A stretch of 64,000 bases of DNA from Fimbriosthenelais zetlandica (taxonomy: Eukaryota). The position numbers and the translations under genes were made by a program. The DNA lies in NCBI GenBank assembly GCA_977030845.1, contig OZ365112.1:18104001-18168000 (forward strand). The letters run 5' to 3'. The notes under the pieces are model-generated. The model was not told where the DNA came from, did no database searches, and was given only the letters and a program-made list of their open reading frames with translations. Below are positions 2,731-64,000 of this stretch, one piece after another (position 1 is the first letter of the stretch; every line of letters starts with the position of its first letter).

Positions 2731-5700
2731 CTTGGACTTTTAATGAGAAGGGTACTCATTTTTGGTCTATTGGTTTTGCCCTCTGCAACTAGCAGGGACC
2801 TCATTTATAATTGTTATGATGTCAAACGCTTCCAAACCTTTTTTCGCTGGGAATACTTATGAATATTTTAATCTTACATATTTACCATAATCCAGCTCAT
2901 ATCACAAAGAGCATAAAAATAACTCTGAGACGGAGGCGAGTTGTCAGGAAGGTACACTGCGAATTAAGGAAAAAGTGAATAGAGGCAAGAGCCCTAAGCA
3001 TGCTCTATACTGGATACATCAAAGATGTCGCTGCCTGATTTGTGCCGTTAAAAAGCACAAAAAGCTAGAATTTACTTTAAAGTTCTGCCAGGATCACATA
3101 TGTATATGTACATCTATCATGCCAATCACAGAGACACAAGCTCAGATTGAGAGCGCGCTTTTTATAGTTTTCAGCAGGAATAAGATCTCTGTTTTTCTGT
3201 GCCTGTGAAGAACTTCTGAAGACTTTATTGATTTCATTTACTTTGTCTCAGTGTATCTCTTTGCTGATAGCTCTTGTCCATGGACAATATTTATATGAAT
3301 GCTGTTATCTTCTGTTTGCTTATAAATGTAGAGTTCCAAGCATATATCTGCGTGTCTTGTCCTCAGTGAATATAGAATACACTGTAAGGGATTTGCTTAC
3401 GTGGTGATTTGTGGAATGAATCCTTAGTGAAGATTCATTTATTTTTTCAACACTTGTTTGCCGCTTCAGCTATATAATGTATCTCTTTGCACCCCTTAAA
3501 CATACGTACTTTGATATCGTGGCTGCAAAGATGTATTTGTAGTCACATGATTAGACCCTAACTTATTTAACTTCGCAATGAATTGCTCACATCGCTGATA
3601 GTTATTGGTGCCATGTGTTGTAAGAGCCTTACTGTCACCCACCAGTCACCCTGGTTGTTTGGTGTTAACCGTCACCTAGTCCTGGGATGAGAGACTGTCA
3701 GCCATTTTGCACGAGATGTCTTGACCTGGACCTCGTGTCAATACGCTTGTCTTGGCCAGCCTAATTGCCTGATTTGGAAACTTGCTTTATTTTGTCATGG
3801 ACTGCAAACATAAGAGAGGGCTGCCGCGCTGCTCCACCTTGGCAATGAGTGACTCTAAGCTCTGCACCTCGCGAGCTGATGATGTGAACTTGCATCCTGT
3901 TTGGTGCCTTTCTGGCTCCTTCTACGCCAGATTGGACTGTGTTGTGGGTGGTTGGAGGTCCCACAAGGCTCCTTCTTTCTCCTTATCCCCCTCTTCCACC
4001 ACATCAAAGTGGCATTGGTGTACACTTTGTAGGAGAGGCAGTAGTTCCCATAGTGAGAACGGATCCAGGCTGAAGAGAGGAACCATGAAAGTCTCTTCTG
4101 CCGAACCTGATGTTGGTTTTCTAAAATTACTTAGCAACATTATGTCATAATGTACAAATCTATGTTATTTCCTTCTCTTAATTAACATTTAAGATTGTAT
4201 TTTGCACTTTCTTTGAGAAGAAATTTGCAGAAAAAGTCCCATGCGAGAATAAAGGAAAGTAAATGACTTCCTTTGTCATTTACAACAAGAAGAACTGACA
4301 TGACTTAAAAATTACATTACCAATTGCCGCAATTGTTGGCACGGCTACATTCAAGCCTTGCACAAATGTTTACAATTAGTGGTTAAATAAGAAGCTCTAT
4401 TTATGGCCAGTTTTCCATCACTCAAAGAAGCGGGAGACTTTGGCGGTGGATTGTATTTTATTGCAGACCTGTTGGTTGTCGTGTAGGTTGCCGTGGGAGG
4501 CACCGTTTGCAACAGCCGCTTTCTGTCAGCTTGTGCCTCATTATGACACATATTAACATGCGCTCTGGCGCACACTTCAAAGACATTCATAATCCTTCTA
4601 AAACACACAACGTCCTGCTGGAATATGTCCAAGATGGCCGCCAACATGGCTTTCTCAGTGGCGAGAACACCCGGTGGTAACCAGCAGAAGTGTGTATATA
4701 TCACGTGACTTGGGTCATGGATATTATGGGATAGTTTAGTTGATGTGGTATGAGTCTCTTTGTAGCCTTGGCAGAGCGAGAATTTTTTGTTGTGCCAGAC
4801 TTTGCTGAATTCTCACAGAGTCCGCCATTTCTTCACAGATTCTCACACAGTCCTGTAGCTCCCACCGTCTGTCAGACCCACACTTCCTGCAAATGATGAT
4901 GACTGGACTACAAGACCATTATCAAAAGCTGCTCTCCAGGATACAGTTCTTCTTGGAATGGTGTATACTATAAAATATGGGTTGTTTTCTTTCATTCTCC
5001 ATCACTTGGTCTACTGTTCTTTAAACCTTCGATCATCTTCCATAGCGAGCATGCTTTCACATGCCATCAGTGGACGATGATTAGCACCATTGTGTCTTAT
5101 TATGCTGTGGTACTTTTTAATTCCTTGATTGAATTATTAGATGCTTAAATCCGAAATTTGTTGATCCTCCCTTTCATGAGAAAGTAGCTATTTGCAAGGT
5201 TAGCGATTTCCCAGATAATGATCTTTAAGACTTTTTTCTGCCTCTCAGTGTTGATCTTTCAGTAGATGTCCGCCCTCACGTCAAGATAGCGACCTTTGAT
5301 AAGTTCATTTGGCTGACCTTTCATCTAATAAGATGAGCTCGCCTTGTAGAGGTATCGGGTCAACCTGCAGGTCAATGAAATGTTCATAAAACTCACGACT
5401 GACTTCTTTTTCACTGTAAAATGTGGAAAAAGGAGTATATCGAGAGCCCTGCTTGTGTTTTTGTCAAAGCCAAGTTGCTGAATTTTAAAGATAAAAGTGC
5501 GTGTTAAGCAGTACTTTGGAAGCACACTTTGAATTATGAAAAAATGGATAGGAACCCTCTATACTGTGCCTCTGAGGAAGCCTGACATTAAAGAGTTCTC
5601 GTTTGTCTATTGTGGGCAAAAGAAGGCGAAAAGCCAATATTGGATGAGAACAGAGCTGTTCATACAGCACTCCAAGAAATGTAGTCAGGAAAACCTTTTC

Positions 5701-8700: not shown

Positions 8701-11700
8701 TGATCAACTTCTCCTGAACCTCCTAGTAGTAGTAGAGTTTAGGGGAGTCGTTTGAAGCCCTCTGTTTGACCATACAATTTAGGGTCTTCGCTATGATTTG
8801 TACAGCGAGTGTTTTTGCACGCCTCTGTTAGGTTTCAATTTGAATCGATCCCAAATATTCAGCAATTTTAGATTTCTGGTCATCATCAGTTTTGTGCTGA
8901 GAGCTGTTTTACATCACATTTCACATAAATGCCCTGTCCACAAGTCACTGTGAGCAAATTGGGTCCAGGCTTGGGTCCCGCCGCTCCTTGACTTCTCTCC
9001 CCGAACACTTGATCAAACAAACAAAAAACACTAACTTCACAGAAGACACAAACTCTGTCCTGGATTCGCCACCAAAATGTCAAGGCTACTTGATTAAAAT
9101 GATAAAACGTGAGCACAGCGCTAACATCCGTGTTACTGATGAACTCGCCATGAAATGATCCTAATTCTTAGTGAGATGAAAGACTCCTGTGGTCGGCTTT
9201 TTCTCATTGTGGTCAAACCTTTCATGTTAGTAATAAGCTCACAGTTTCCCGCCATTTTGCACGATTGTCGTCTGCTGACATAGTCATGTGATCACACGCC
9301 TTGGGAATGAGGCTGAGGATCACTTTGGTTTGTGATCACTTCAAAAGGCCTGTTTTTATAAACCCTCCTTTTTTAACTGAATTATTACGGTTTTGTAGAA
9401 TTCGATTTTAAGGAGATTAATTTAGAACTTATGTTCCTGATGACAGGATGTGATGATTTAATTGATAGGAGAGCTGATAGGTGACAAATGTTTGTTGAGC
9501 TGTCCTGTAAGAGGGCCTGTTCCTGTCAGGGCCAGACTTAGCAACAGTAATTAATCCTTCAAAAGTTAATGCTGTCCGCAGACAAAACCTGTGTTGACCA
9601 GAACACTCAGGTTTTATCCTATTGTTCAATGACTCATCGAGATTCATTCTATTCCATTCAATAGTTTTCAGTAAAACCTCAGCTGCTCTTCAGTAAAGCT
9701 TGTTTATCCATTCCTTAATTAATAGAACTGTCCCAAGCATCAGTAAAAGGCACCATGCTATTGTATGGTGACGTCCAAGCCTAAAATACCATTACGGCTT
9801 TGAAGCTGCCTTCTTGTGAGAAAGGGTGGGTCCATGCATTCAGCATTCCGTGAGAATAAACGTGTCATGATCTCTGACTCCTCAGTGAATGAAGTATGCA
9901 GCCTTCTTTACCAATCACAGATATCTCATACATGATGCCATCTATATGATAATAAAGCTACCAAAAGACTGTGCCTGCTCTTTCACCTTGAAGGTCAGGG
10001 TATTCTTTTTTACCAGAGGATCTGATAAAAAAAATTCTGCATTCATTTCCTGTTATTTAGGACAGGGATGCACTGACTGGACCTGACTGCATCTCATTTG
10101 ATGATAGGAAGCTGATGGTAATATATATGTTGATCAGTTGTTTTCTCCAAAGTGTGTTCTGTGAGAAACATAATTATGTTGCTCGAACATAAAACTTGTG
10201 TGCTCTTTACCCCAAGATGTACTTTCTTCATCTACCATCTTGGCTCCGTCCAGCATACCACATTCATCCTGGTACAAACAGGTCCCTGGACTGCTGACCC
10301 TTATATTCCTAAACAATCCATTACATATATCTAGAGGGTCCTCTGGGAGATTGCAGAATGCTTCACTTCATTCACTTCCAATATATTCCCACCATCCAGG
10401 GTAGCGAACTCTGCCAACTTCACCAAGCTAATTAACCACAAGCTCATTTTTCCAACAAATGGTCCTCGGCTTTCCTGAGCAGGCAATATTTCTTGTTAAA
10501 CCAGGCGTTCCATGATGCTCGCCAAAACTATTGCTTACAGGTTATTGGTCGTTGAGTTGCTCATTTAGTTATGACCCTGGTTGGCTGAGGGATGCTTCAC
10601 TACCCAATGAGCTGATTGAGAACAAAAGCTGCCTGGCCAAAAGGACATATTGGTGGCGTTGGCAACCGAGAAGCGAGTCTCATTTTCCTTGACCCGACCC
10701 CGGTGGTCAAACAATCAATCAATGCTCAGACAAAAGCCATCTCCTGCCAGCATTTTGACAAATGGCTACCGGCACTAATATGGCCTTCTTATGATGCTAT
10801 TATATTATTATGAAGAAGGCTAAAAATCTCTGCAAGTGTATGAAGTACATGTAGTCAAGTTGAAAAATCAAAAGCTCGCATGTATTAATGAGAACACTGG
10901 CCAGATGAGAGAACAAACTTTTCAGTAATGCCTCCACAAAAGTGTTATATACTATGATAAGCTTGACAACCTTGGTTATAATTAGTTACTAAATGGAAAG
11001 TTTTGCAAAGATTTCACGAGAGATGGCATTAGTCCACGTGCTGGTCCCCAAAGCCATCCCCATCCCGGTACCTAGACAGGAAGCCTAGCCTGGTCCCCTC
11101 TCCTCCACTTAGATGTTCATGGAACGTCACCGCATCTAACATCAATCAGAAAAATCTTTTTTTTTTCATTAAAAACTGAAAGGTTCGTTCGCTATTCTCT
11201 TTGATGTCTCGTCAAAAAGACAATGGTTGCCGTAGCAACTCATTAAAGCCGAGAGTAATTGTCCCACAGGCCGGCAGGCGGATCTGCCATCACTAATACT
11301 AGATAGAGGATGAGTTAGGGGGCAGGGCACCTCACGCTGAGCAAACCAGAGGCTAGAAAAAATGACTTATTACTCTAATTACCAGGTAGATTATTGTAAA
11401 TCAAAAGGCATAACTTGCCTACATTCTTGTGGATTATATAGCATGAGATTGGCATTCAAGAAAATGCATATTTATAGACATTCGTGTCACATATGCGGGA
11501 ATTTATAATACCAATCTGTGAAACGCTTTCATTCATATGATTCATTATTCCTATCAATGGACTTTCATCAGTAAAGTCGTGTTGAAAGTGTTCGTCAAAT
11601 GTAATAAATTATACATGGAGTGTATTCCTTAGCTGTTCAGATCATTTCTAAGTTCACCATTTTGCTGCACTTATCCCCCCTGCCCCCTCCCCATCCCTTT

Positions 11701-12744
11701 GCCTGTCCCCCTACAGCCCACATTAAATTGTGCTCTCTTCCTTTCACCCCGCCATGTTAATGTTTTAAAAGTCTTTCTCAATCCGCACAAATCCCTTTCG
11801 GCTCGGTGGCAAGCTTTGCGGAGGGCCTTCTTTTCTTCTCAAATGCACTCACATCAAAGCCCTCTCCTGCGAGTTTTCATATTTTGTGAAGAAAGGCTGC
11901 CGTCACGCGCAAATTATAAGATAGTCTGTGACAAATGAAAGAGTGCTTCAGATGAAAGCAGGATGGGATGAAAGTCGTCTGCTAGATTAGAGTCAGTGAG
12001 ACTGGGCGGGAAAGGCGGGTGGGAGGGAAGGAGAGAGGCGGTAGGCATTGGGACACGATTTGAGTGGCTACAGGAAAGCTTTGCTTTGCACAGCAAAGTC
12101 AAGATGTACCAAAGTTATCTATTAATACCACATAATCTCATTTAGCATTCCCTTTATTCCCGCGTCTTTGTGTGAATTCACGCACTCTGTCATTAGTCAT
12201 TAGCTGCAACCATGCATGTTAACTTATGATGCTATTCTTCCTCTCTCAATGTCTCCATATTTCTCTTTTATTGTCTCTTTTTCTTTCTCTCTGATTTCTC
12301 TTTCACTTTAGTACTGACTTTCGTAATCTTCCTCCCCAATCACCCCCAGCCCCCTCTTTCTGCTCTCTTTCATTCTCTTCCCCGTCTCTATCTGGCCCCT
12401 CTTTCTTGCTTTTCTCCCTCCCTCTATGCCCATGTGAAAGCCTTTGACGGGTGTACCCTGCAAAGAAGGGCTTTGAAGAACTTTTAGGTATTTTATCAAT
12501 GTCCTCGCTCTTTTCTTTTTGTTGGGATGGATTCTTACTGATCAAAGTGTCTTTTATCCTCTTTTGATATCTAGTGCATACAACATGAGACATGATGCAT
12601 ATTTTAACAGAATATGGAGTCGATGCCTCTGACTTTCATTTATCATCGTTACAGTGATTTAAGCTTATTTCATACATTTGTTATTAATTGAGATTTCTTT
12701 CAGTACTCAGACTAGCTTAGAAAATTGTACTTTGAGACTATTAT

Positions 12745-51219: not shown

Positions 51220-51346
51220 TCAATCGACCTTCTCGAGCCTAGCAAAGACCTTGCCCTCCCAGAGAGGGAGGATGGCTTCTTCATTACTAACTTCCTCAAA
51301 AATAACTCCTGATCCAAACTCGTCACTGGCCGCCTTGAAGAAATAC
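51220..51346 (-). CDS. Axin: Axin last coding exon (C-terminal half of DIX domain)
   Basis: Acceptor ttcttgcag|G, phase 2. Encodes (R)YFFKAASDEFGSGVIFEEVSNEEAILPLWEGKVFARLEKVD*, matching the Axin DIX C-terminus (human AXIN1 YYFKKVSDEFDCGVVFEEV...KVEKVD). TGA at 51220-51222. Confidence 0.97.
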
Positions 51347-54038
51347 CTGCAAGAAAGAATATACATTATTAGTGATGGATAAAGTATAACATTGAATAAA
51401 CAATATATCATACATACAAAGACACATCTCAACTCATAAACTAAGAGAAAGGAAGGAGGACCATATTGTAATGCCTATCAACAGGAAAGAGTTGGAACGT
51501 GATGTGTTGAGGAACATCCACCTCGCGCGCCCCCTCCCACACTGACGAACATCATGGGTCGGGTTCAACCAAAGGCTCGCGCTTTTGATGTACAATTCAG
51601 AGAAGGGGGTAGCAGAGAGAAAATCCCGCCTTTCATCTCGTATCACATGTCAATAGCGGATCAACTAATGCCAAAATTGAATTAAAACCGCCGGTTTATC
51701 TCGGGGGCCGCCAGGGGGTGTTTAGTTAGAAGCGGGTGGAGTGGGGGCAGCATCTACAAACCTTCTCCCTTTCCTTCCCCCACTCTAATCCCGCCCTTTG
51801 ATCCCAGGAGGGTCAACATCACGTTTATCACTCTCCAATGATCACTGCAAGGTCTACGGCCTAACTGTCAACCCTATTAAACCTAAAGAGTGTCAGCCTT
51901 CATCAGACTAACGGTTAATTCTAATCGCAACTTCCTCACAAATACCTTCAGGATCTAATGTATATTGGGAAGTATAAAATCCCATCTTCCAGATGGATTA
52001 GTATAAATATGGTTTCCCCATTTTCTATTTTTACAATATTAAAGAGTATATCGCGTGATTCTATTTCCTTTCACAATCTCCTCTTTGTAAAATAAACTAG
52101 AATCCCGTCTGATATGAATATCCTTTGTGTAGTGAGCAGCTCAGAAAAGGATATGAATAGGACAAGAAATATCAGCATGGAAACACGATCCTCCACATAA
52201 CGACCACAGGAGGATCCAGGCAGCATGTGACGTCACCACATCAAAGAGACCACATGTATACACACGCCCAGCTCTCGTCACCCGAGACGGGAATTTTCTC
52301 ATGAAATGTAAACATTTCTTTTGTTCTATCATTAGACTCTCTGGGTAGATCGTCTTCTAACAGGATAACGCTGTGAAATGTCATCTGCCCCACACCCCAG
52401 CTAAGACATCAAGGACTGGGTCAGCCTCAGGTTCAAACCTCACTAACCACATGAATGATATTTCAGACCTATCACACTTTTTCAACTTTCGATAAACCGT
52501 GATCTTAGACGTCTCTAAGAGGAAGTTCATCTAACAATGTCATTGTACATATATTCCCCTAATTCTTGGGTACTTTCCTTCTACTCCGGCCCTTCCCAAG
52601 ATCCGCATTCAGTAGACAATGTTAAGTGTCAACTATTGCCACCAGGCGACCCTGAAGGATTCTTTGCCTAAAGGTTCTGAGGATGACACATCAAAAAGAC
52701 GTCTACCATTTCCTGCCAAATGCTAATGAAAATTCCCCAAGGAAATAGATGTCAAACATCCTAAACAAGGCCACACTAACCGGCCCTACCTTCATATGTA
52801 GCCTCGATCTGGACATGAATTGCCCACAGCTCTCGTGAAAAGTTATGATGTTATTTTCTATAGGATTGTCCCCAAATTTTTAAGTTCATCCCTGTAGCAT
52901 TCAAAGAGATACTTTGGTACCCAATGGCAACGGTTAAGTACTCATTGCATGTATGCACCTTTGATCTAGCCTGGACTTCAAAGGCATGCTAGGCCAGGGT
53001 CAAATATTCACATACAAAGGTCACATGCCAGAGGTCAAGGTCAGATGTGGAAGGTCAGTTTCAAGTCGGTAAAGGGGCGACATCTTTGTGTCGGGAGTGA
53101 CATCACCTAGGTAAGTAAGCTCGACCAGTGTGGGTAAGTGAGGGTGTGTGTGTGAGAGAGGTACTGGGTCATGTGACCCCTAGTGAAGACTCGCTTTGAT
53201 CTCCAACTGTTTGATGTGCCGGTCCCAGGTATCCCTGGCATTAACCTCGCCTCAGTGGCACTCTGTAATTGATGGGAAGTGAACTGGGCGAATTCTAGGC
53301 AAGAAATAGATTCACCTCCCATTTTATCCACTTAATATGTTCACTACTTTCAATAAGTTAATCAACCTTTCGTACTGTTAAACTTCTCTGCCAATAAATG
53401 CAGCATAGGAATACTGAAGCTGTAATTATCAGCGTGGGAGATATAGGGAGATGAAAGCTGGGTTGATCCTGTAATCTGATGGGGCAGGGAGATCCCACCC
53501 TCTCCCCCTGCTACTCACTATGCTGGCAATGCGAGTTATTCCTCTATAGTGGCTCCACTCCCCAGATAAACCAGGTAACCTGGTCTCGAGCTGCTCGCTC
53601 CCTAGTTACAGCCACGCCCCTTATCTCATTCCTTAGTTACCTTATCTGTGGTTATCTGCCTGGCCTACACACCTGGCGCCTCGTGTACAGAGAACCTACT
53701 TCTCCACAGGGAATACATTTAGGCTGGCTCTTTGATACATTGAATTCTCCCTCTACAAATACTGGGCCACCAAAAGATGCAAGATTAGCAGAGTGATTCC
53801 CCTATCGTATATAGATTAAGATATATGTAAGCCCGGATTAACGCGTACAGGTAGCAACATAAGCTGACATAAATCTGTTAATCCGCCAGTTTAACCTTGA
53901 CCCGCACCTCGCCACTCTGTCTCCACATAACAGTTATCAGAGGAACCTTGGCACTTTATGAGACTTCAAAGTGGGTTGTATGCCATGAGAGTCATCACCT
54001 CAGCGTTTTAAATGGTAATAAAAATATAGAGTACTAAC

Positions 54039-54218
54039 CTGAAGCTGCCACGTTTGGTGATGAGTTGCTTGAACTGTCCCAGCGTAACTTGTTTTCCTGG
54101 AATGGTGGTTCTGTAAGGGATGTCATCCCCATGGAACAGGTAACCCACCACCGTCACGTCGCCTTGTGACGGTGTGGTGGGAGCTGTCGCAGACGGGCGT
54201 CGAGTTGTACGAATACGA
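54039..54218 (-). CDS. Axin: Axin exon, N-terminal half of DIX domain
   Basis: Acceptor cttgttttcag|T, donor AG|gttagt, 180 nt, phase 2-2. Encodes [59 protein letters not shown](R). The IPYRT...VTLGQFK...KRG motif is diagnostic of DIX. Not in the ORF track. Confidence 0.96.
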
Positions 54219-54331
54219 CTGAAAACAAGCAGAATTACAATTATTATATGTTCACTTCCTGATAGTTTCCGAAATAGTTTTATTGTTAAAAATGCCAGTA
54301 CATGTGCTTGGATATTTCTATCTGGTCTTAC

Positions 54332-54469
54332 CTGTATGTGTCTGCATCAGCTGAAAGGTCGAGGACTTGGGGTGGCAAACCCTTTGAGGATGAGGAGAGA
54401 GAACGAGGAATTGGAGGGTAGTTGGGTGGAGGCATGCTCCTTTTGTCCTTACCAGACATACCCATGCGG
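54332..54469 (-). CDS. Axin: Axin symmetric 138-nt exon (possible cassette)
   Basis: Strong acceptor ttgttcctttatctctttacag|C and donor CAG|gtaaga, phase 2-2, open. Encodes [45 protein letters not shown]. Flanking introns are 118 and 113 nt. Not in the ORF track. Confidence 0.85.
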
Positions 54470-59049: not shown

Positions 59050-59900
59050 TAAGCTTCACTTTCAACCACCGGCCCACTTGAGTCCATTGTGGCTCCTGTT
59101 TTCGCCCACTTCAAACATGAGGATTCTTTCAGCGAGCCGGGACTGGCACGGTTGATCTGTCATTTCCGGGTGTTGCCAGTTCGCCTCGCTCCCCTCCGCT
59201 CTTTTCGCGCCTTCTCATAAGCACAACTCTCCGCCTTTCATCTCTGCAAAAACCCGATCCCTCCTGCTCCGCTTTTTAATACCCGATCGTCCTCGCCACT
59301 CCGTTTACCAATTACACTTGCGCCCATCAACAAATGCTGGTGAATACATCAAATTTTAACCGGTTCTCTCTCCTCCTTTCATCAAGAGCTGGCGGCTGCT
59401 CTGCGCGCTTTGATGACAAAACGCGACCAGGATCCGGAGCCAGCCCTTCATAGAGGGATCCACATCCAGGCGCCACCACAAATATCAATTACAAAACCAC
59501 CTCCTCCCCCAGCCCGACAATAGAGAGCTATTCACAACCCATCCTTCAGAGCTGCTCGGGGAGGGGGAGGGGGAAGGCTATTGGTGGCCTAAAGGATAGT
59601 AGAGCTGCTCCATGCTTTGAGCTGCCACCACAAATTGTCAAATTACCCCCCGTCCCAGCAGCGTCCTCCAATCGGGACGGACGCGGGCTTTTATTACCCC
59701 CCACCCTGCCACTAATCCCGCCTGTTTACCAGCCTCTAATCCACGGATTACCGCCCCCGCCCCCCTAACACTGCCCCCATGGTGGGGAGAGATCCAAGCT
59801 TCCTTTATCTGCCACCAGCTGGCGCGGGATGTGAGGGCAGGGCGTGGCGCTAATAGTTGGTCCCAGCAAGAAGATCAAACAGCCACCAAGTCATGTACCA
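59050..59900. promoter_or_regulatory. CpG/GC-rich intronic element with a TCF site, GC boxes and an inverted TAATCC pair
   Basis: Many CpGs. GCGCTTTGATG near 59408, CCGCCCCCGCCCC near 59751 and TAATCCACGGATTA at 59737-59750. Confidence 0.45.
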
Positions 59901-60433
59901 ACAGCCCCTATGGTAGATGAGAGGGTGGTCGCCCATCCCTCCTGTTATCATGCTTCTACTGCTACAGTGGTCGGCTGGGGGAGGGGGTACTACCCCACCA
60001 TCCTTTATACATACACATCCAAATCCTCTATATACAGAAACAGCCCCTCCCTACAGTCCTTCCTCCCATGCCTAAATTAAAGGCACTATTCACCTGTCTT
60101 TGTGACTTGTGATTAACAGTGTCCCTCAGAGAGGAACACCCTCCCTTGTGAAGCCAGTTTTCCTTTTATACACATGGCTTCCCTCCACCCAGTGCACTGT
60201 GAAGCCTGGGCTACATTACTGGGATAAGGACGTTCATACCAAGCACTCTTATCACTAACGTCCCATTGTTTTTCCCTGTAAATGGTGCACAATCAGCTGG
60301 TCAACTCTACCCCAACCCCAACCTCCTTTCCTGTAGTTCCTCTGTAATTTTACCCCATGCTGAATGAACATAGATAAGAAGAACAGACAGAGAGTAGTTG
60401 ATAATTAGTTGAAGTACTAAGTGCAATACTTAC

Positions 60434-61152
60434 TTTTCATTGGCTGGGTATCCCGTGGGCTCATATCGTACACTAACTCCACTGTCGATGTTACTACTCG
60501 TATCCAAACTCTTCTTAGTGTTTGATGAGCGTTTAGTGTCCTTTGATCGCCCTCTTGACCCGGGTTCTTCCCAACTTCTTGAGAATTCAGAGAAAGATCG
60601 TTCAGCCCGGTGATGTCCTGAACTCCGGTTGTGAGGATCAATCTCCATATGCTGGCTTTTATTTAAACTAAGTTTAGAGTCCTTGCTGTTGTGGTGATGA
60701 TGGTGGTGATGATGGACATGTTTGCTAAGGCGATCGCCATCACCATAGCGATTATATACACCTGACTTTTCCTCACCCATCCCACTATCAAAGGATAATA
60801 GAGAAGTGAGGTGAGATGCACTGTCCTTGTCTTTAGTTCTTTTAATATGGTTAGGTTTATGTGGTAAAGATATGCCTGACACATTTGGAGAAGGACCAGC
60901 AATCATTCTCCTTCCGGATAAGCTCCGGTCACGATCCGACGTTCGCTCTGGAGAATGTCTACCTGGAGTCCGGCTGGGTGTCTGTCCAGCGGAACTGTCC
61001 CATATCCTAGAACAATGCTCCTCCAATATGCTTTGGGCATTGTCCTCCCGCTCCTTCTCTGCCATGGCGGCTGACATGAGGGCCATCATAGACACTGACT
61101 TATTATGAGCAGATAACGTTGATTTGTTCATGTCCTCTTCGTCTGTCATCTG
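60434..61152 (-). CDS. Axin: Axin exon encoding the beta-catenin-binding region and His tract
   Basis: Acceptor tctcttttatcttta-CAG-CAG (phase 0), donor AA|gtaagt, 719 nt open. AQSILEEHCSRIWDSSAGQTPSRTPGRHSP matches the Axin beta-catenin-binding helix and S/TP cluster (human [21 protein letters not shown]). HVHHHHHHHH is also Axin-typical. Confidence 0.96.
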
Positions 61153-62592
61153 CTGTAAAGATAAAAGAGAGGAGGATATTAATAAACAGCAGCTTAACGG
61201 TTAACTGAGATATATTATGGTTACATATAAAGACAGCAAATATCGCCAACAGTAATCTTGCTCTATAAAAGATTTTCAATTCATACAGGCTCTTGCTATG
61301 TTACATCCCCTACTTGGTAAAATATGAATATTAGACCACTCGACATCATGTCTTATCAATATGACATACTGTCACTTCCTTATCGTTATCACAATGTGTG
61401 TGGTAATCTTCATCCCCGTCTCAGTGCATATACATCTTGACTGCAGGTCAATTTGATCGTGTTGAACATTTACAGCTGATAAGAAAGTTAAACATCACCT
61501 GACCCGTGATATATCTCAGCTTGGGCTTTAGAGTTTCAGAGAGAACTTCATACAAAAGTACATTGATTTCTTATCAGACTACTTCAAAGAATCAAAGAAT
61601 CAATGTGTAGACAGTGTGGGTAAACGAACTATGGTGCAACAAGTGCCCCATGTGATGCACTACTCACAAGCCCCTCCCACTGATTCGACTACTGGCAGGA
61701 CTACCATTTACGGAGGAGGCTCAATCTCACAAGCTCTTAACAGTCCTTCTGACTAACCAAACAATGACTTGTCAAACCAACCTGATCGGCTTCATTAACC
61801 ATGCACATGATTTGAGTAATGACAGTCACAGTTCATTGAGATTTTTGGTTACCGGTGTCACTGAGCAATGATTAATAAGTCTGACACATAAAAAAAACAG
61901 GCAAAAACATGAACTAAAGCTCAGAAGTACGGGTAGAATACCCAACAACAAAGACAGGTAGGGCAGTTCAGGACGACCTGGGCGTGGATTGACTTTGATC
62001 TCGGCAGTTGAGGAGAGGAAGATGAAAGATTGGGAGAGGATGAAAGAGAATGGGGAGACATCGAGATGAGTATTATAGAAAACGTCGGTGAGATGAGCTT
62101 ATATCAAAGATAAACCCTACAAACAAGACTTCAGTTGGTGGAAAGGGGTTGTGATCACTGGACCAGAACTGGGGGAACAAGCAACAGAGGACCTGCTGGG
62201 GGCTGACCCCGATACACGACAATAGAGGTACAACAGGCGCAACTATTTCTGCCCCTTTTGTCCCTTTCTCCCTCAAGCAACCACACTTCATAATGCAACT
62301 CATAGCGCACACAACCAGGGTTTATATCGACACTTGTGTTACAACCAAGAGTTCATTCATTTTCCCTTATCAATAGAACGAAACAAATGCTGAGCTGGGC
62401 ACAAATCTTAACAGAAGCCAAAAACACACTTAGAGTAAAGTTAGCTACCGCTGAGTGCTGTGAGAGGGCCGGATGTTTGTCACCCCGGTGTGTTTAAGCC
62501 TTTGATAATATTTGGCCTTTCTTGTCTGAGGAGAAAAACTTAACAGAAGCCAATAACATTTCACCAAATACCAAGCAAAACAGCTGACTCAC

Positions 62593-63000
62593 CATGGGTT
62601 CCTCCTCGTTCTCATGGATCACACCAAGTGTGGCTGAGATATGTTTGTTTAATAGAGACTCGGTGTTGAGGTTGTTCATGCACTTGTTGTTATTAAAGTT
62701 ATGATTGTTGGTCATGGTTCTGTTCTGGTTACCACACCATTTGACACCCATGCTTTCAAGTCCAGCTTTCAGTGCGCGGCGGATTTCATCTTCAACATTC
62801 TCAGATATGACATTACCAACAGTGAGCGGCATGACACCGTTACCATTAGACAGCATGGTCCAGACTTTATCCTGGGGGCAAGTGTTCCCCTGCTCAGCCA
62901 TGTAGTACTCCGTACCTTGTCGATGGATGACTTTGATTAATGATATGCTACTTCCCAGCACCAGAGAATCCCCGTCCTGAGTGAGGTTAAGCATCTTCAT
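62593..63000 (-). CDS. Candidate additional or alternative Axin exon (MKMLNLTQ...LGVIHENEEEPM)
   Basis: Frame open from 63084 to the donor ATG|GTGAGT at 62593/62592, which is phase 0 and in frame with the 61152 acceptor. First ATG at 63000. Possible acceptors at 62977 (phase 0) and 63062 (phase 2). No homology recognised. Confidence 0.55.
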
Positions 63001-64000
63001 CCTCGCTGAGTGGTTGTAGGCTATGGCATGCCCAGACACACATGTGACATACAAGTAATAACTGTAGAATAACACTAAACTGTTCTAGCAGCGTCTCTTG
63101 CTTATTCCACAGTCTTAACTGGATGTAGCCCTGGTCAGACTGTTCTCTGTGGGCTGCTGTTGTTGTCTGGTCTCTCAGTGGGACAGCTGTGGCTGCATGG
63201 ACTGGGTGGAGACAGACTGACAGGTGCCTCTCTGCCTGCCTCAATGGGGAACAATGGACTTCACAGCAAAGGACTCACAGAGTCCAAATTCCTCTTACAA
63301 GTAAGCTTCCTACGGGTCTATATGATGTAGGATTCCAGTGTAAGTGACAGGATTCCACTGTCAAATCCGTATCAATGTATGACTAACGAGTGATAACAGC
63401 TGAGATACCGAGTGCCTGATGCTGAGGCCTCTCACTCTCCACTACTACCTGCTCAACTCCCAGTCAGAGCACTAATGTCTCTACTCCCCTTACTCACACC
63501 CTCTCAGCCAACCCAACCCCGCTGCTCATTGGCTGCTTGCACAGCTGAGCCTGTGCTGCCGCCGGTGACAGAAGACTGAACTAAAACATTGATGACCTGG
63601 GAAAAGGCTTCGGAAACAAGTGTGCTATGCTTATTAGGGGTTGATTAGATACGTAACCGACAGGTAATCTAGGAGGAAAAACTAATTTTCTTTGTAATAA
63701 GTGAAGAGGGAGGAGAATGGGAACACGACCTGTTACTTTGAGTCACATATTTGAGGCAGCATCTGGTATTGTGTGCACGTTTATGGTGGCAACATCAGAG
63801 GACCGTGTTTAGCATTTTACGAGGAGAAAGGCTTGGTAATGCATTCCCTCCATACACAGATCAATAGCATTTCTTACAAGGAGAGACATATGTGCATACA
63901 TAGAGAAGCATCAAAGAGGACTGCTGTCTTTTGATGATAAAATCAACGTTAAGTACATAAAATAGGGGGGTCTAAGCAGCACCCCCGCCCCTTCATTACC

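What the first reader, a model, noticed from the sequence alone, without database searches (positions are those of the whole stretch)
62593..63084. Hidden in-frame Axin exon carrying its own PP2A-B56 docking motif: possible novel isoform
Seen: a stop-free, protein-like segment (helix-like VEDEIRRALKAGLESMG, Asn-rich linker) ends at a near-consensus donor ATG|GTGAGT. Its phase 0 matches the acceptor of the beta-catenin-binding exon 1.44 kb downstream. Its last residues are LGVIHENEEE (62599-62628). Known: LxxIxE followed by acidic residues is the PP2A-B56 docking motif. Canonical Axin carries a related motif (LPTLNEDEE in human AXIN1, from memory) after the RGS domain, and the exon normally preceding the beta-catenin exon encodes the GSK3-binding helix, which this segment does not resemble. 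Inference, two models. (a) An alternative first coding exon (ATG 63000, 136 aa) gives an Axin lacking tankyrase, APC/RGS and GSK3 sites but keeping B56, beta-catenin and DIX binding, a possible dominant-negative or phosphatase-recruiting modulator. (b) A symmetric 384-nt cassette (acceptor ctcactcag| at 62977) inserts a B56 site between the GSK3 and beta-catenin sites.
Basis: partly seen in the sequence, partly recalled or inferred. Interest (0 to 1): 0.82.

Follow-up and report, generated by a model that had tools for sequence, protein, structure and literature searches.

The report
Lineage-specific start exon inside Axin
Inside an intron of the Wnt-pathway scaffold gene Axin of a probable annelid lies a genuine, strongly conserved protein-coding exon with its own start codon. 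It most likely gives a short Axin that lacks the APC- and GSK3-binding parts and gains a new module with a phosphatase-docking-like motif, but no RNA data could be obtained to show that it is used.

Summary
The segment (62593-63000, minus strand) is real coding sequence. Four other taxa carry it in the same place in Axin. Non-synonymous divergence is 0.08 while synonymous sites are saturated (0.73).

Conservation begins exactly at ATG 63000, with A at -3 in all four DNA sequences. It ends exactly at an invariant donor, ATG|GTGAGT, in phase 0. That phase matches the beta-catenin-binding exon 1,440 nt downstream.

In a relative, the canonical GSK3-binding exon lies about 5 kb upstream, so the segment sits in the GSK3-to-beta-catenin intron. 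It is not the GSK3 exon. Two more distant Axin loci lack it, so it is lineage-restricted. No homologue was found anywhere else.

Candidate acceptors upstream of the ATG lie 20, 28, 30 and 0 nt from it. This favours model (a), an alternative 5' coding exon, over model (b).

L-x-V-I-x-E-N-E is invariant in all five taxa despite synonymous changes, which fits a B56 motif; binding is untested.

No RNA run was listed, so splicing, the transcription start and the isoform itself remain inferred. Frog deletion data argue against a simple dominant-negative role.

The parts
62593..63000 (-). Coding part of the new exon: 136 codons from the ATG to the last codon before the donor.
   Evidence: Open frame. 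Orthologues P0001-P0004 have 65-87% identity. pN 0.08 against pS 0.73 versus L001, with codon-position differences of 10/10/66. Single copy in the window.
62998..63000 (-). Predicted start codon, in the context a-g-g-ATG-A. A second ATG lies two codons later.
   Evidence: ATGAAGATGCT and the A at -3 are invariant in the window, L001, L004 and L005. Conservation collapses upstream of the ATG.
62587..62592 (-). Splice donor GTGAGT, phase 0, directly after codon ATG at 62595-62593.
   Evidence: ATGGTGAGT is invariant in all four DNA sequences. Protein conservation stops here, and indels of 1 and 3 nt follow in the window/L001 alignment.
62737..63000 (-). Conserved N-terminal module, residues 1-88. 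It has two blocks (1-35 and 47-86) around a variable loop. Strands followed by one helix (VEDEIRRALKAGLESMG) are predicted at low confidence.
   Evidence: 53 invariant columns in five taxa. AlphaFold pLDDT is only 38-41. No Pfam, PDB or Atlas match.
62599..62628 (-). LGVIHENEEE, a candidate PP2A-B56 docking motif (LxxIxE plus an acidic tail) at the end of a variable Asn-rich linker.
   Evidence: L, V, I, E, N, E are invariant in five taxa (LGVIHENE or LDVIAENE), with synonymous changes in the L, V, I and N codons. It fits [LMFI]xx[ILV]xEx (PMC5586252). Binding was not tested.
63021..63030 (-). Candidate 3' splice site catgccatag|, 20 nt upstream of the ATG.
   Evidence: The block is conserved with L001 (ccgtag|, 28 nt before the ATG), although synonymous sites are saturated. 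L004 has cccctcccccag| 30 nt before the ATG, and L005 has tccgtcaag| directly before it. This is inference only.
60434..61152 (-). Beta-catenin-binding exon of Axin, the presumed splice partner. The acceptor is ttacag|CAG, with an alternative AG giving a start at 61149.
   Evidence: Pfam PF08833, E 1.3e-14. Phase 0 acceptor. The same layout is seen in L004 and on the P0002 contig. The donor is AA|GTAAGT.
63752..63999 (-). Conserved non-coding element upstream of the exon, with a GC box (63983-63991) and a TCF site (63910-63916). It runs to the window edge.
   Evidence: 82% identity over 255 nt with L001, with frame-breaking indels.
63525..63535 (-). CCAAT box CAGCCAATGAG, about 530 nt upstream of the ATG.
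   Evidence: Conserved in L001 at about -595 nt. A CCAAT box, GACCAATCAG, lies at about -610 nt in L004. It is only weakly significant on its own.
61993..62109 (-). Two TCF sites (62103-62109 and 61993-61999) in the intron between the new exon and the beta-catenin exon, both conserved with L001.
   Evidence: No conserved coding block lies in this intron.
51223..54346 (-). Span holding the two open frames that encode the DIX domain, the C-terminal end of any product.
   Evidence: Pfam PF00778, E 1.9e-11 (54011-54346) and 1.7e-10 (51223-51474).

Best explanation
The segment is a lineage-restricted protein-coding exon that arose in the intron between the GSK3-binding exon and the beta-catenin-binding exon of Axin.

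Most likely mechanism:
1. Translation starts at its own ATG (63000).
2. The exon ends at an invariant phase-0 donor (62593|62592).
3. It is most likely joined to the phase-0 acceptor of the beta-catenin exon (61152).

The product would be a short Axin of roughly 550-600 residues. It would carry, in order:
- a new conserved 88-residue module;
- an Asn-rich linker;
- an invariant LxVIxENE motif;
- the beta-catenin-binding helix;
- the DIX domain.

It would lack the tankyrase, RGS/APC and GSK3 sites. The ATG exon probably has a short spliced 5' leader. The transcription start is unknown.

What is shown: coding selection, the conservation boundaries, matching phases, conserved position in the gene, restriction to one lineage, and motif invariance.

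What is inferred: use of the donor, the splice partner, the start codon, B56 binding, and any effect on Wnt signalling.
For: Coding and selection:
- Only four relatives were found among 1.84 billion representatives. All are ORF calls on unspliced genomic contigs.
- Two of them lie 1.5-2.0 kb upstream of an Axin_b-cat_bind ORF.
- pN/pS is 0.08/0.73.

Conservation boundaries:
- ATGAAGATGCT, the A at -3 and ATGGTGAGT are invariant.
- Nothing aligns between the window and L004 outside the coding blocks.

Position and phase:
- The GID exon is found separately in L004 at 5024-5167, phase 0/0.
- The beta-catenin acceptor is phase 0 in the window and in L004.
- The intron downstream of the donor holds only TCF-centred conserved blocks and no other coding block.

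Start codon rather than cassette:
- The distances from candidate acceptors to the ATG are 20, 28, 30 and 0 nt, so they do not preserve the frame.
- The window has no in-frame AG upstream of the ATG within its open frame.

Lineage restriction and motif:
- The exon is absent from L006 and L007, which have both flanking exons.
- The motif is invariant in five taxa.
Against: - No RNA evidence exists. No run could be listed, and no transcript-derived protein holding the junction was seen in either protein search.
- CpG o/e in the 1 kb upstream of the ATG is low in the window (0.15-0.4). That is not the signature of an unmethylated promoter.
- No TATA box or clear initiator was found.
- Each taxon does have one in-frame AG near the ATG (window and L001 at +24, L004 at -30, L005 at 0). 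A cassette is therefore not formally excluded.
- The fold prediction is of low confidence.
Confidence: 0.55

Rival explanations
1. The segment is an in-frame cassette exon of full-length Axin. It would insert the new module and motif between the GSK3 and beta-catenin sites.
For: The flanking exons are both phase 0. Window and L001 have cag| at +24. L004 has a good ccccag| at -30, in frame. L005 has caag| directly before the ATG.
Against: These AGs sit at different positions. About one such AG per taxon is expected by chance. The 62977 acceptor is absent in L004 and L005. It would also exclude MKMLxL, whose codons are invariant in all four DNA sequences. The best-conserved candidate acceptor (63021, shared with L001) gives a stop codon within 8-14 codons when read from a phase-0 donor.
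Confidence: 0.12
2. The segment belongs to an independent small gene nested in the Axin intron. Its transcript either ends in the intron or splices to an unrecognised exon, and its product carries no Axin domains.
For: It has its own ATG with a conserved context. No homology to Axin or to anything else was found. Conserved non-coding elements with a GC box and a CCAAT box lie upstream.
Against: The invariant GTGAGT argues for splicing. The next conserved coding block on this strand is the beta-catenin exon, in the same phase. The intron has only TCF-type conserved blocks. Read-through tails are not conserved and run 2-61 residues. Position and strand relative to the beta-catenin exon are kept in every taxon with enough contig.
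Confidence: 0.15
3. The exon is included in transcripts from the canonical Axin promoter through the out-of-frame acceptor near 63021. This would end the upstream reading frame, giving an Axin with only the N-terminal half. The new ORF would be translated only by reinitiation, or the transcript would be degraded.
For: A conserved acceptor-like block lies 20-28 nt before the ATG in the window and L001. In the window, the phase-0 reading ends at a TGA that overlaps the ATG.
Against: Strong purifying selection over 136-194 codons needs efficient translation of this frame. In L004 and L005 the same reading would be in frame, so the mechanism is not conserved.
Confidence: 0.06
4. The segment is the canonical GSK3-binding exon in a diverged form. 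This was my own first idea, based on the I-xxx-L-xxx-L-xx-M spacing of its helix.
For: The helix has the same i, i+4, i+8, i+11 hydrophobic spacing as Axin 383-399 (peptide quoted in PMC8786283).
Against: The true GSK3 exon (IDPAKFASMLIERLDKV) lies 4.9 kb upstream in L004, and the same exon is present in L006 and L007. hhalign probability between the two alignments is 0.07%.
Confidence: 0.01

Closest known systems
B56-type motif of vertebrate AXIN1/AXIN2 (LPTLNE[DE]EE, after the RGS domain)
   Same: Both are L-x-x-[IL]-x-E followed by acidic residues, in a disordered stretch of an Axin-locus product. AXIN2 CGYLPTLNEEEEWT is listed as a predicted B' motif (PMC5586252).
   Different: Here the motif lies in a new exon next to the beta-catenin site, not after RGS. 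It has Ile at position 4 and Asn at position 7. It would be the only such site in a product that lacks the RGS region.
Engineered N-terminal Axin truncations in Xenopus (Ax331-956, Ax531-956; Fagotto et al. 1999)
   Same: The Axin-derived part of the predicted isoform (beta-catenin site to DIX) corresponds roughly to Ax531-956.
   Different: Those are artificial constructs. Ax531-956 had no dorsalising, dominant-negative activity, whereas Ax331-956, which keeps the GSK3 site, did (PMC2133179). The natural exon adds an 88-residue conserved module and a SLiM that the constructs lack.
N-terminally truncated TCF/LEF isoforms from internal promoters (dnTCF1, dnLEF1; from general knowledge)
   Same: Both are Wnt-pathway genes that make an isoform lacking an N-terminal interaction domain from an internal start, in a locus with TCF sites.
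   Different: Those isoforms only lose a domain, while this one would also gain a new conserved module. An internal promoter is not shown here.
Wnt-responsive intronic TCF sites of vertebrate AXIN2 (from general knowledge; Pdu-Axin treated as a putative Wnt target in PMC5996498)
   Same: Conserved TCF sites flank the exon (63910-63916, 62103-62109, 61993-61999). The window holds 85 TCF heptamers against about 11 expected.
   Different: These sites would be expected in an Axin intron whether or not the new exon is used. They do not show which transcript they drive.

Membership tests
Axin gene (is the segment an exon of the Axin locus?) | It lies within the Axin transcription unit, on the coding strand, between known Axin exons. 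| tested here: met
   The beta-catenin and DIX exons lie downstream on the same strand. In L004 the GSK3-binding exon is 4.9 kb upstream and the beta-catenin exon 2.0 kb downstream.
Axin gene (is the segment an exon of the Axin locus?) | It is spliced to Axin exons in mRNA. | not testable with these tools
   No RNA run was listed. Only phase compatibility and an invariant donor are shown.
Protein-coding exon under selection | Open frame kept in relatives, an excess of synonymous change, and indels in multiples of three. | tested here: met
   pN 0.08-0.26 against pS 0.66-0.82. Codon-position differences are 10/10/66 and 29/21/80. Coding lengths are 408, 405, 483 and 582 nt.
Alternative first coding exon (ATG-initiated) | A conserved ATG with a favourable context; no conserved coding sequence and no conserved frame upstream. 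| tested here: met
   ATG and the A at -3 are invariant. Upstream residues are unrelated. The spacing from candidate acceptors is 20, 28, 30 and 0 nt.
Alternative first coding exon (ATG-initiated) | Its own transcription start or 5' leader. | tested here: inconclusive
   Conserved GC box, CCAAT box and TCF site lie 0.5-1 kb upstream. However, CpG o/e is low, and there are no CAGE or RACE data.
   The AG at 62977 is present in the window and L001 only. L004 has cct| and L005 has gcc| at that position.
PP2A-B56 LxxIxE docking motif | The sequence fits [LMFI]xx[ILV]xEx with acidic residues nearby, in a disordered region. | tested here: met
   LGVIHENEEE and LDVIAENENN follow a variable-length Asn-rich linker. 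Motif definition from PMC5586252. pLDDT is below 35 in this part.
PP2A-B56 LxxIxE docking motif | Evolutionary conservation of the key positions 1, 4 and 6. | tested here: met
   L, I and E, plus V3, N7 and E8, are invariant in five taxa despite synonymous changes. A match of this degenerate pattern somewhere in 136 residues has a chance of roughly 0.3 by my estimate. Conservation, not presence, is therefore the evidence.
PP2A-B56 LxxIxE docking motif | Physical binding to the B56 groove, lost on mutation of L, I and E. | not testable with these tools
   This needs a pull-down or ITC experiment.
Axin GSK3-interaction helix (GID) | Sequence kinship with the GID exon. | tested here: not met
   hhalign probability 0.07%. 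The GID exon was found separately. Only the hydrophobic spacing is alike.

The most novel reading that the evidence does not exclude
One clade of (probable) annelids evolved a new coding exon, with no detectable source, inside Axin. It yields a natural short isoform that keeps the beta-catenin and DIX sites but swaps the APC/GSK3 kinase-scaffold half for a new folded module plus a B56 phosphatase-docking motif. This would turn part of the Axin pool from a kinase scaffold into a phosphatase scaffold, possibly under Wnt control through the conserved TCF sites that flank the exon.
Probability: 0.2. Interest if true: 0.75.

Novelty: new variant of a known kind. Interest (0 to 1): 0.5.

Why it matters
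[quoted passage not shown] Only artificial constructs have so far probed an Axin without its RGS and GSK3 sites. A natural, selected isoform of that kind, carrying a new conserved module and a phosphatase-docking-type motif beside the beta-catenin site, would offer two things. It would be a ready-made experiment on how kinase and phosphatase recruitment are balanced on Axin. It would also be a clear case of a new coding exon arising in an old signalling gene. I found no paper describing an Axin isoform of this kind. If the exon proves to be a nested gene instead, it is still an unannotated, conserved protein of unknown function.

Tried and rejected
- **Divergent GSK3-binding exon.** My first reading is rejected. 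The true exon lies upstream in L004, L006 and L007, and hhalign probability is 0.07%.
- **RNA evidence.** Two run searches listed nothing: RNA over 60400-63400, and any kind over 62560-63030. Read laying could therefore not be used.
- **Transcript-derived proteins spanning the junction.** The search with the beta-catenin exon returned 29 proteins, and all are single-exon ORF calls.
- **Homology of the segment.** Nothing was found in Pfam, in PDB sequences (best E 0.38) or in the ESM Atlas (best score 0.37). The 5.8-billion-protein search gave only the same three relatives. The metagenome contig scan gave none. Rfam gave no hit over 60000-64000.
- **Structure.** Two AlphaFold runs gave pLDDT 38.5 and 40.6. 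No fold search was run on such models.
- **Transposon or repeat.** Rejected. The segment is single copy in the window and syntenic in relatives.
- **CpG-island-type promoter.** Not seen in the window.
- **Hidden exon in the downstream intron.** Only TCF-centred blocks are conserved there.
- **Conserved blocks at 59153-59356.** These looked like possible small exons. They are non-coding, have stops in all frames, and lie beside a TCF site at 59408-59414.

Full report
**1. Observation**

The minus strand of the window end carries the 3' half of an Axin gene. Pfam finds the Axin beta-catenin-binding motif in the open frame 60433-61149 (E 1.3e-14). It finds DIX in two further open frames, 54011-54346 and 51223-51474.

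- a 196-codon open frame at 62497-63084;
- an ATG at 63000;
- 136 codons up to CCC ATG|GTGAGT, with the exon ending at 62593;
- LGVIHENEEE at 62628-62599;
- a phase-0 acceptor of the beta-catenin exon 1,440 nt downstream (ttacag|CAG ATG), so the exon starts at 61152, with a second AG allowing 61149.

It is the second-longest open frame of the window in all six frames.

**2. It is real coding sequence**

A phmmer search of the 128-residue stretch against 1.84 billion representatives gave only four hits, at 65-87% identity. All are ORF calls on unspliced genomic contigs that read on through the donor. The word-indexed search of 5.8 billion proteins added nothing.

DNA was obtained for three of the four taxa:
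- L001-L003, from Logan;
- L004, 20.5 kb, from ENA;
- L005.

Nei-Gojobori counts on the codon alignment are as follows:

| Comparison | pN | pS | Differences by codon position |
|---|---|---|---|
| Window vs L001 | 0.08 | 0.73 (saturated) | 10/10/66 |
| Window vs L004 | 0.21 | 0.82 | 29/21/80 |

Length differences are all in multiples of three. The frame is therefore translated and under strong purifying selection. A chance ORF, a pseudo-exon and a transposon fragment are all excluded. The segment is also single copy in the window.

**3. Where it sits**

My first idea was that the helix VEDEIRRALKAGLESMG is a diverged GSK3-binding helix. This proved wrong.
- In L004 the canonical GSK3-binding exon (RTDRAPKDRNIAEIDPAKFASMLIERLDKV...KTLE, 144 nt, phase 0 at both ends) lies at 5024-5167.
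- The segment's ATG in L004 is at 10043.
- The beta-catenin exon in L004 starts at 12531.
- On the P0002 contig an Axin_b-cat_bind ORF follows the segment by about 1.5 kb.

So the segment lies in the intron between the GSK3 exon and the beta-catenin exon, on the coding strand, always 1.4-2.0 kb before the latter. A profile-profile comparison of the segment with the GSK3 exon gave probability 0.07%. Only the hydrophobic spacing is alike.

**4. Boundaries**

In the four-way DNA alignment:
- ATGAAGATGCT and the A at -3 are invariant, and similarity collapses upstream of the ATG.
- At the other end ATG|GTGAGT is invariant, and protein conservation stops there.
- Between the window and L001 the next 48 nt are still similar, but with 1- and 3-nt indels, so they are not coding.
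- Between the window and L004, blastn aligns only the coding blocks.

At that position L004 has cct| and L005 has gcc|.

Within the window's open frame there is no in-frame AG upstream of the ATG. The best-conserved acceptor-like block (catgccatag| at 63021; ccgtag| in L001) lies 20 and 28 nt before the ATG. L004 has ccccag| at 30 nt, and L005 has caag| at 0 nt. These spacings do not keep a frame. From a phase-0 upstream donor, the window and L001 would run into a stop within 8-14 codons.

The simplest reading for all taxa is a start codon preceded by a short, possibly spliced, leader. A cassette is not formally excluded, because each taxon has one in-frame AG somewhere between -30 and +24. 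About one such AG per taxon is expected by chance.

**5. Splice partner**

The donor is phase 0, and so is the beta-catenin exon acceptor in the window and in L004. Window and L001 are saturated at synonymous sites, so anything that still aligns is constrained. In the 1,440-nt intron the only such blocks are centred on TCF sites (62103-62109 and 61993-61999). No coding block is present. The beta-catenin exon is therefore the most likely partner, but this is inference.

No RNA run could be listed for the stretch. None of the 29 relatives of the beta-catenin exon in the protein collection is transcript-derived.

**6. Upstream region**

Window and L001 share a 255-nt non-coding element at 82% identity (63752-63999, running to the window edge). 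It holds a GC box and a perfect TCF site. They also share a block around a CCAAT box (63525-63535). L004 has a CCAAT box and a TCF site at similar distances, which alone is weak evidence.

CpG o/e in the 1 kb before the ATG is low in the window (0.15-0.4, against 0.51 overall). This does not look like an unmethylated promoter. The transcription start is thus unknown.

The whole window is very rich in TCF heptamers, 85 against about 11 expected. Other first-stage notes said the same. Such sites are expected in an Axin intron in any case.

**7. Age**

Two more distant Axin loci, L006 (NCBI assembly) and L007 (ENA), contain the same 144-nt GSK3 exon and the beta-catenin exon about 6 kb apart. An unfiltered hmmsearch of the segment profile on their six-frame translations finds nothing. 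The exon is thus restricted to one lineage, with five taxa known. It has no detectable source:
- Pfam, PDB sequences, ESM Atlas and a metagenome scan were all blank.
- AlphaFold with the five-row alignment gave pLDDT 38.5 and 40.6. It hinted only at three or four strands followed by one helix.

Earlier notes of this scan call the genome probably annelid. I did not test that.

**8. The motif**

The protein alignment shows two conserved blocks (1-35 and 47-86). A linker of very variable length follows. A third block ends in L-[GD]-V-I-[HA]-E-N-E just before the donor.

L, V, I, E, N and E are invariant in five taxa, while their codons vary synonymously. The constraint is therefore on the peptide and not on a splicing enhancer.

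The pattern fits the published B' motif [LMFI]xx[ILV]xEx. AXIN2 LPTLNEEEE is listed as a predicted site in that paper (PMC5586252). A match to such a degenerate pattern in 136 residues is not rare. The conservation is what counts. Binding is untested.

**9. Likely function**

If joined to the beta-catenin exon, the product would hold the following, in order:
- the new module;
- the linker;
- the motif;
- the beta-catenin helix, about 45 residues further on;
- DIX.

It would lack the tankyrase, RGS and GSK3 sites. In frog embryos an Axin starting after the GSK3 site (Ax531-956) had no dominant-negative activity, whereas Ax331-956 did (PMC2133179).

I think the more likely role is to bring PP2A-B56 next to Axin-bound beta-catenin, or into DIX polymers. 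I rate this low, at about 0.2.

**10. Novelty**

I found no paper on an internal-start Axin isoform, or on Axin isoforms in annelids. This is a new variant of a known kind: an alternative 5' coding exon in a well-known gene. It rests on strong comparative evidence for the exon and on no expression evidence for the isoform.

Noticed in passing
window 63752-63999 (-), runs to the window edge: A 255-nt non-coding element is 82% identical to L001 although synonymous sites are saturated. It contains a GC box (GGGGCGGGG, 63983-63991) and a perfect TCF site (CTTTGATG, 63910-63916). It may be an intronic Wnt-responsive enhancer or part of a promoter.
   Followed up: partly
window 61993-61999 and 62103-62109 (-): Two TCF sites in the intron after the new exon lie inside the only blocks of that intron conserved with L001 (CTTTCATCTTCCTC...GATCAAAGTC and CTTTGATAT).
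   Followed up: partly
window 59153-59356 (-), with a TCF site at 59408-59414 just upstream: Non-coding blocks after the beta-catenin exon are conserved with L004 (14616-14861). They have stops in all frames. A perfect TCF site (CATCAAAG, 59408-59414) lies about 50 nt upstream of them, outside the aligned blocks.
   Followed up: partly
whole window: There are 85 TCF/LEF heptamers (CTTTGAT or ATCAAAG) against about 11 expected from base composition. This agrees with first-stage notes on a TCF-dense Axin landscape.
   Followed up: partly
window 61149-61153 (-): The beta-catenin exon has a tandem acceptor (ttacag|cag|ATG) that could add or drop one Gln. L004 has a single AG (ctgcag|CAA ATG).
   Followed up: no
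window 60433-61149 (-); L004 12507-13388: A run of eight histidines in the beta-catenin exon is kept in L004, and P0029 also shows a histidine run.
   Followed up: no
window 62545-62592 (-): The first 48 nt of the intron after the donor are conserved with L001 (GTGAGTCAGCTG...GGTATTT...AAATGTTATTGGCT). This may be an intronic splicing regulator, as is often seen next to regulated exons.
   Followed up: no
L007 15878-19850 (-): A 1,040-residue ORF with endonuclease and reverse-transcriptase domains (LINE-type retroelement) lies in the Axin locus of that relative.
   Followed up: no
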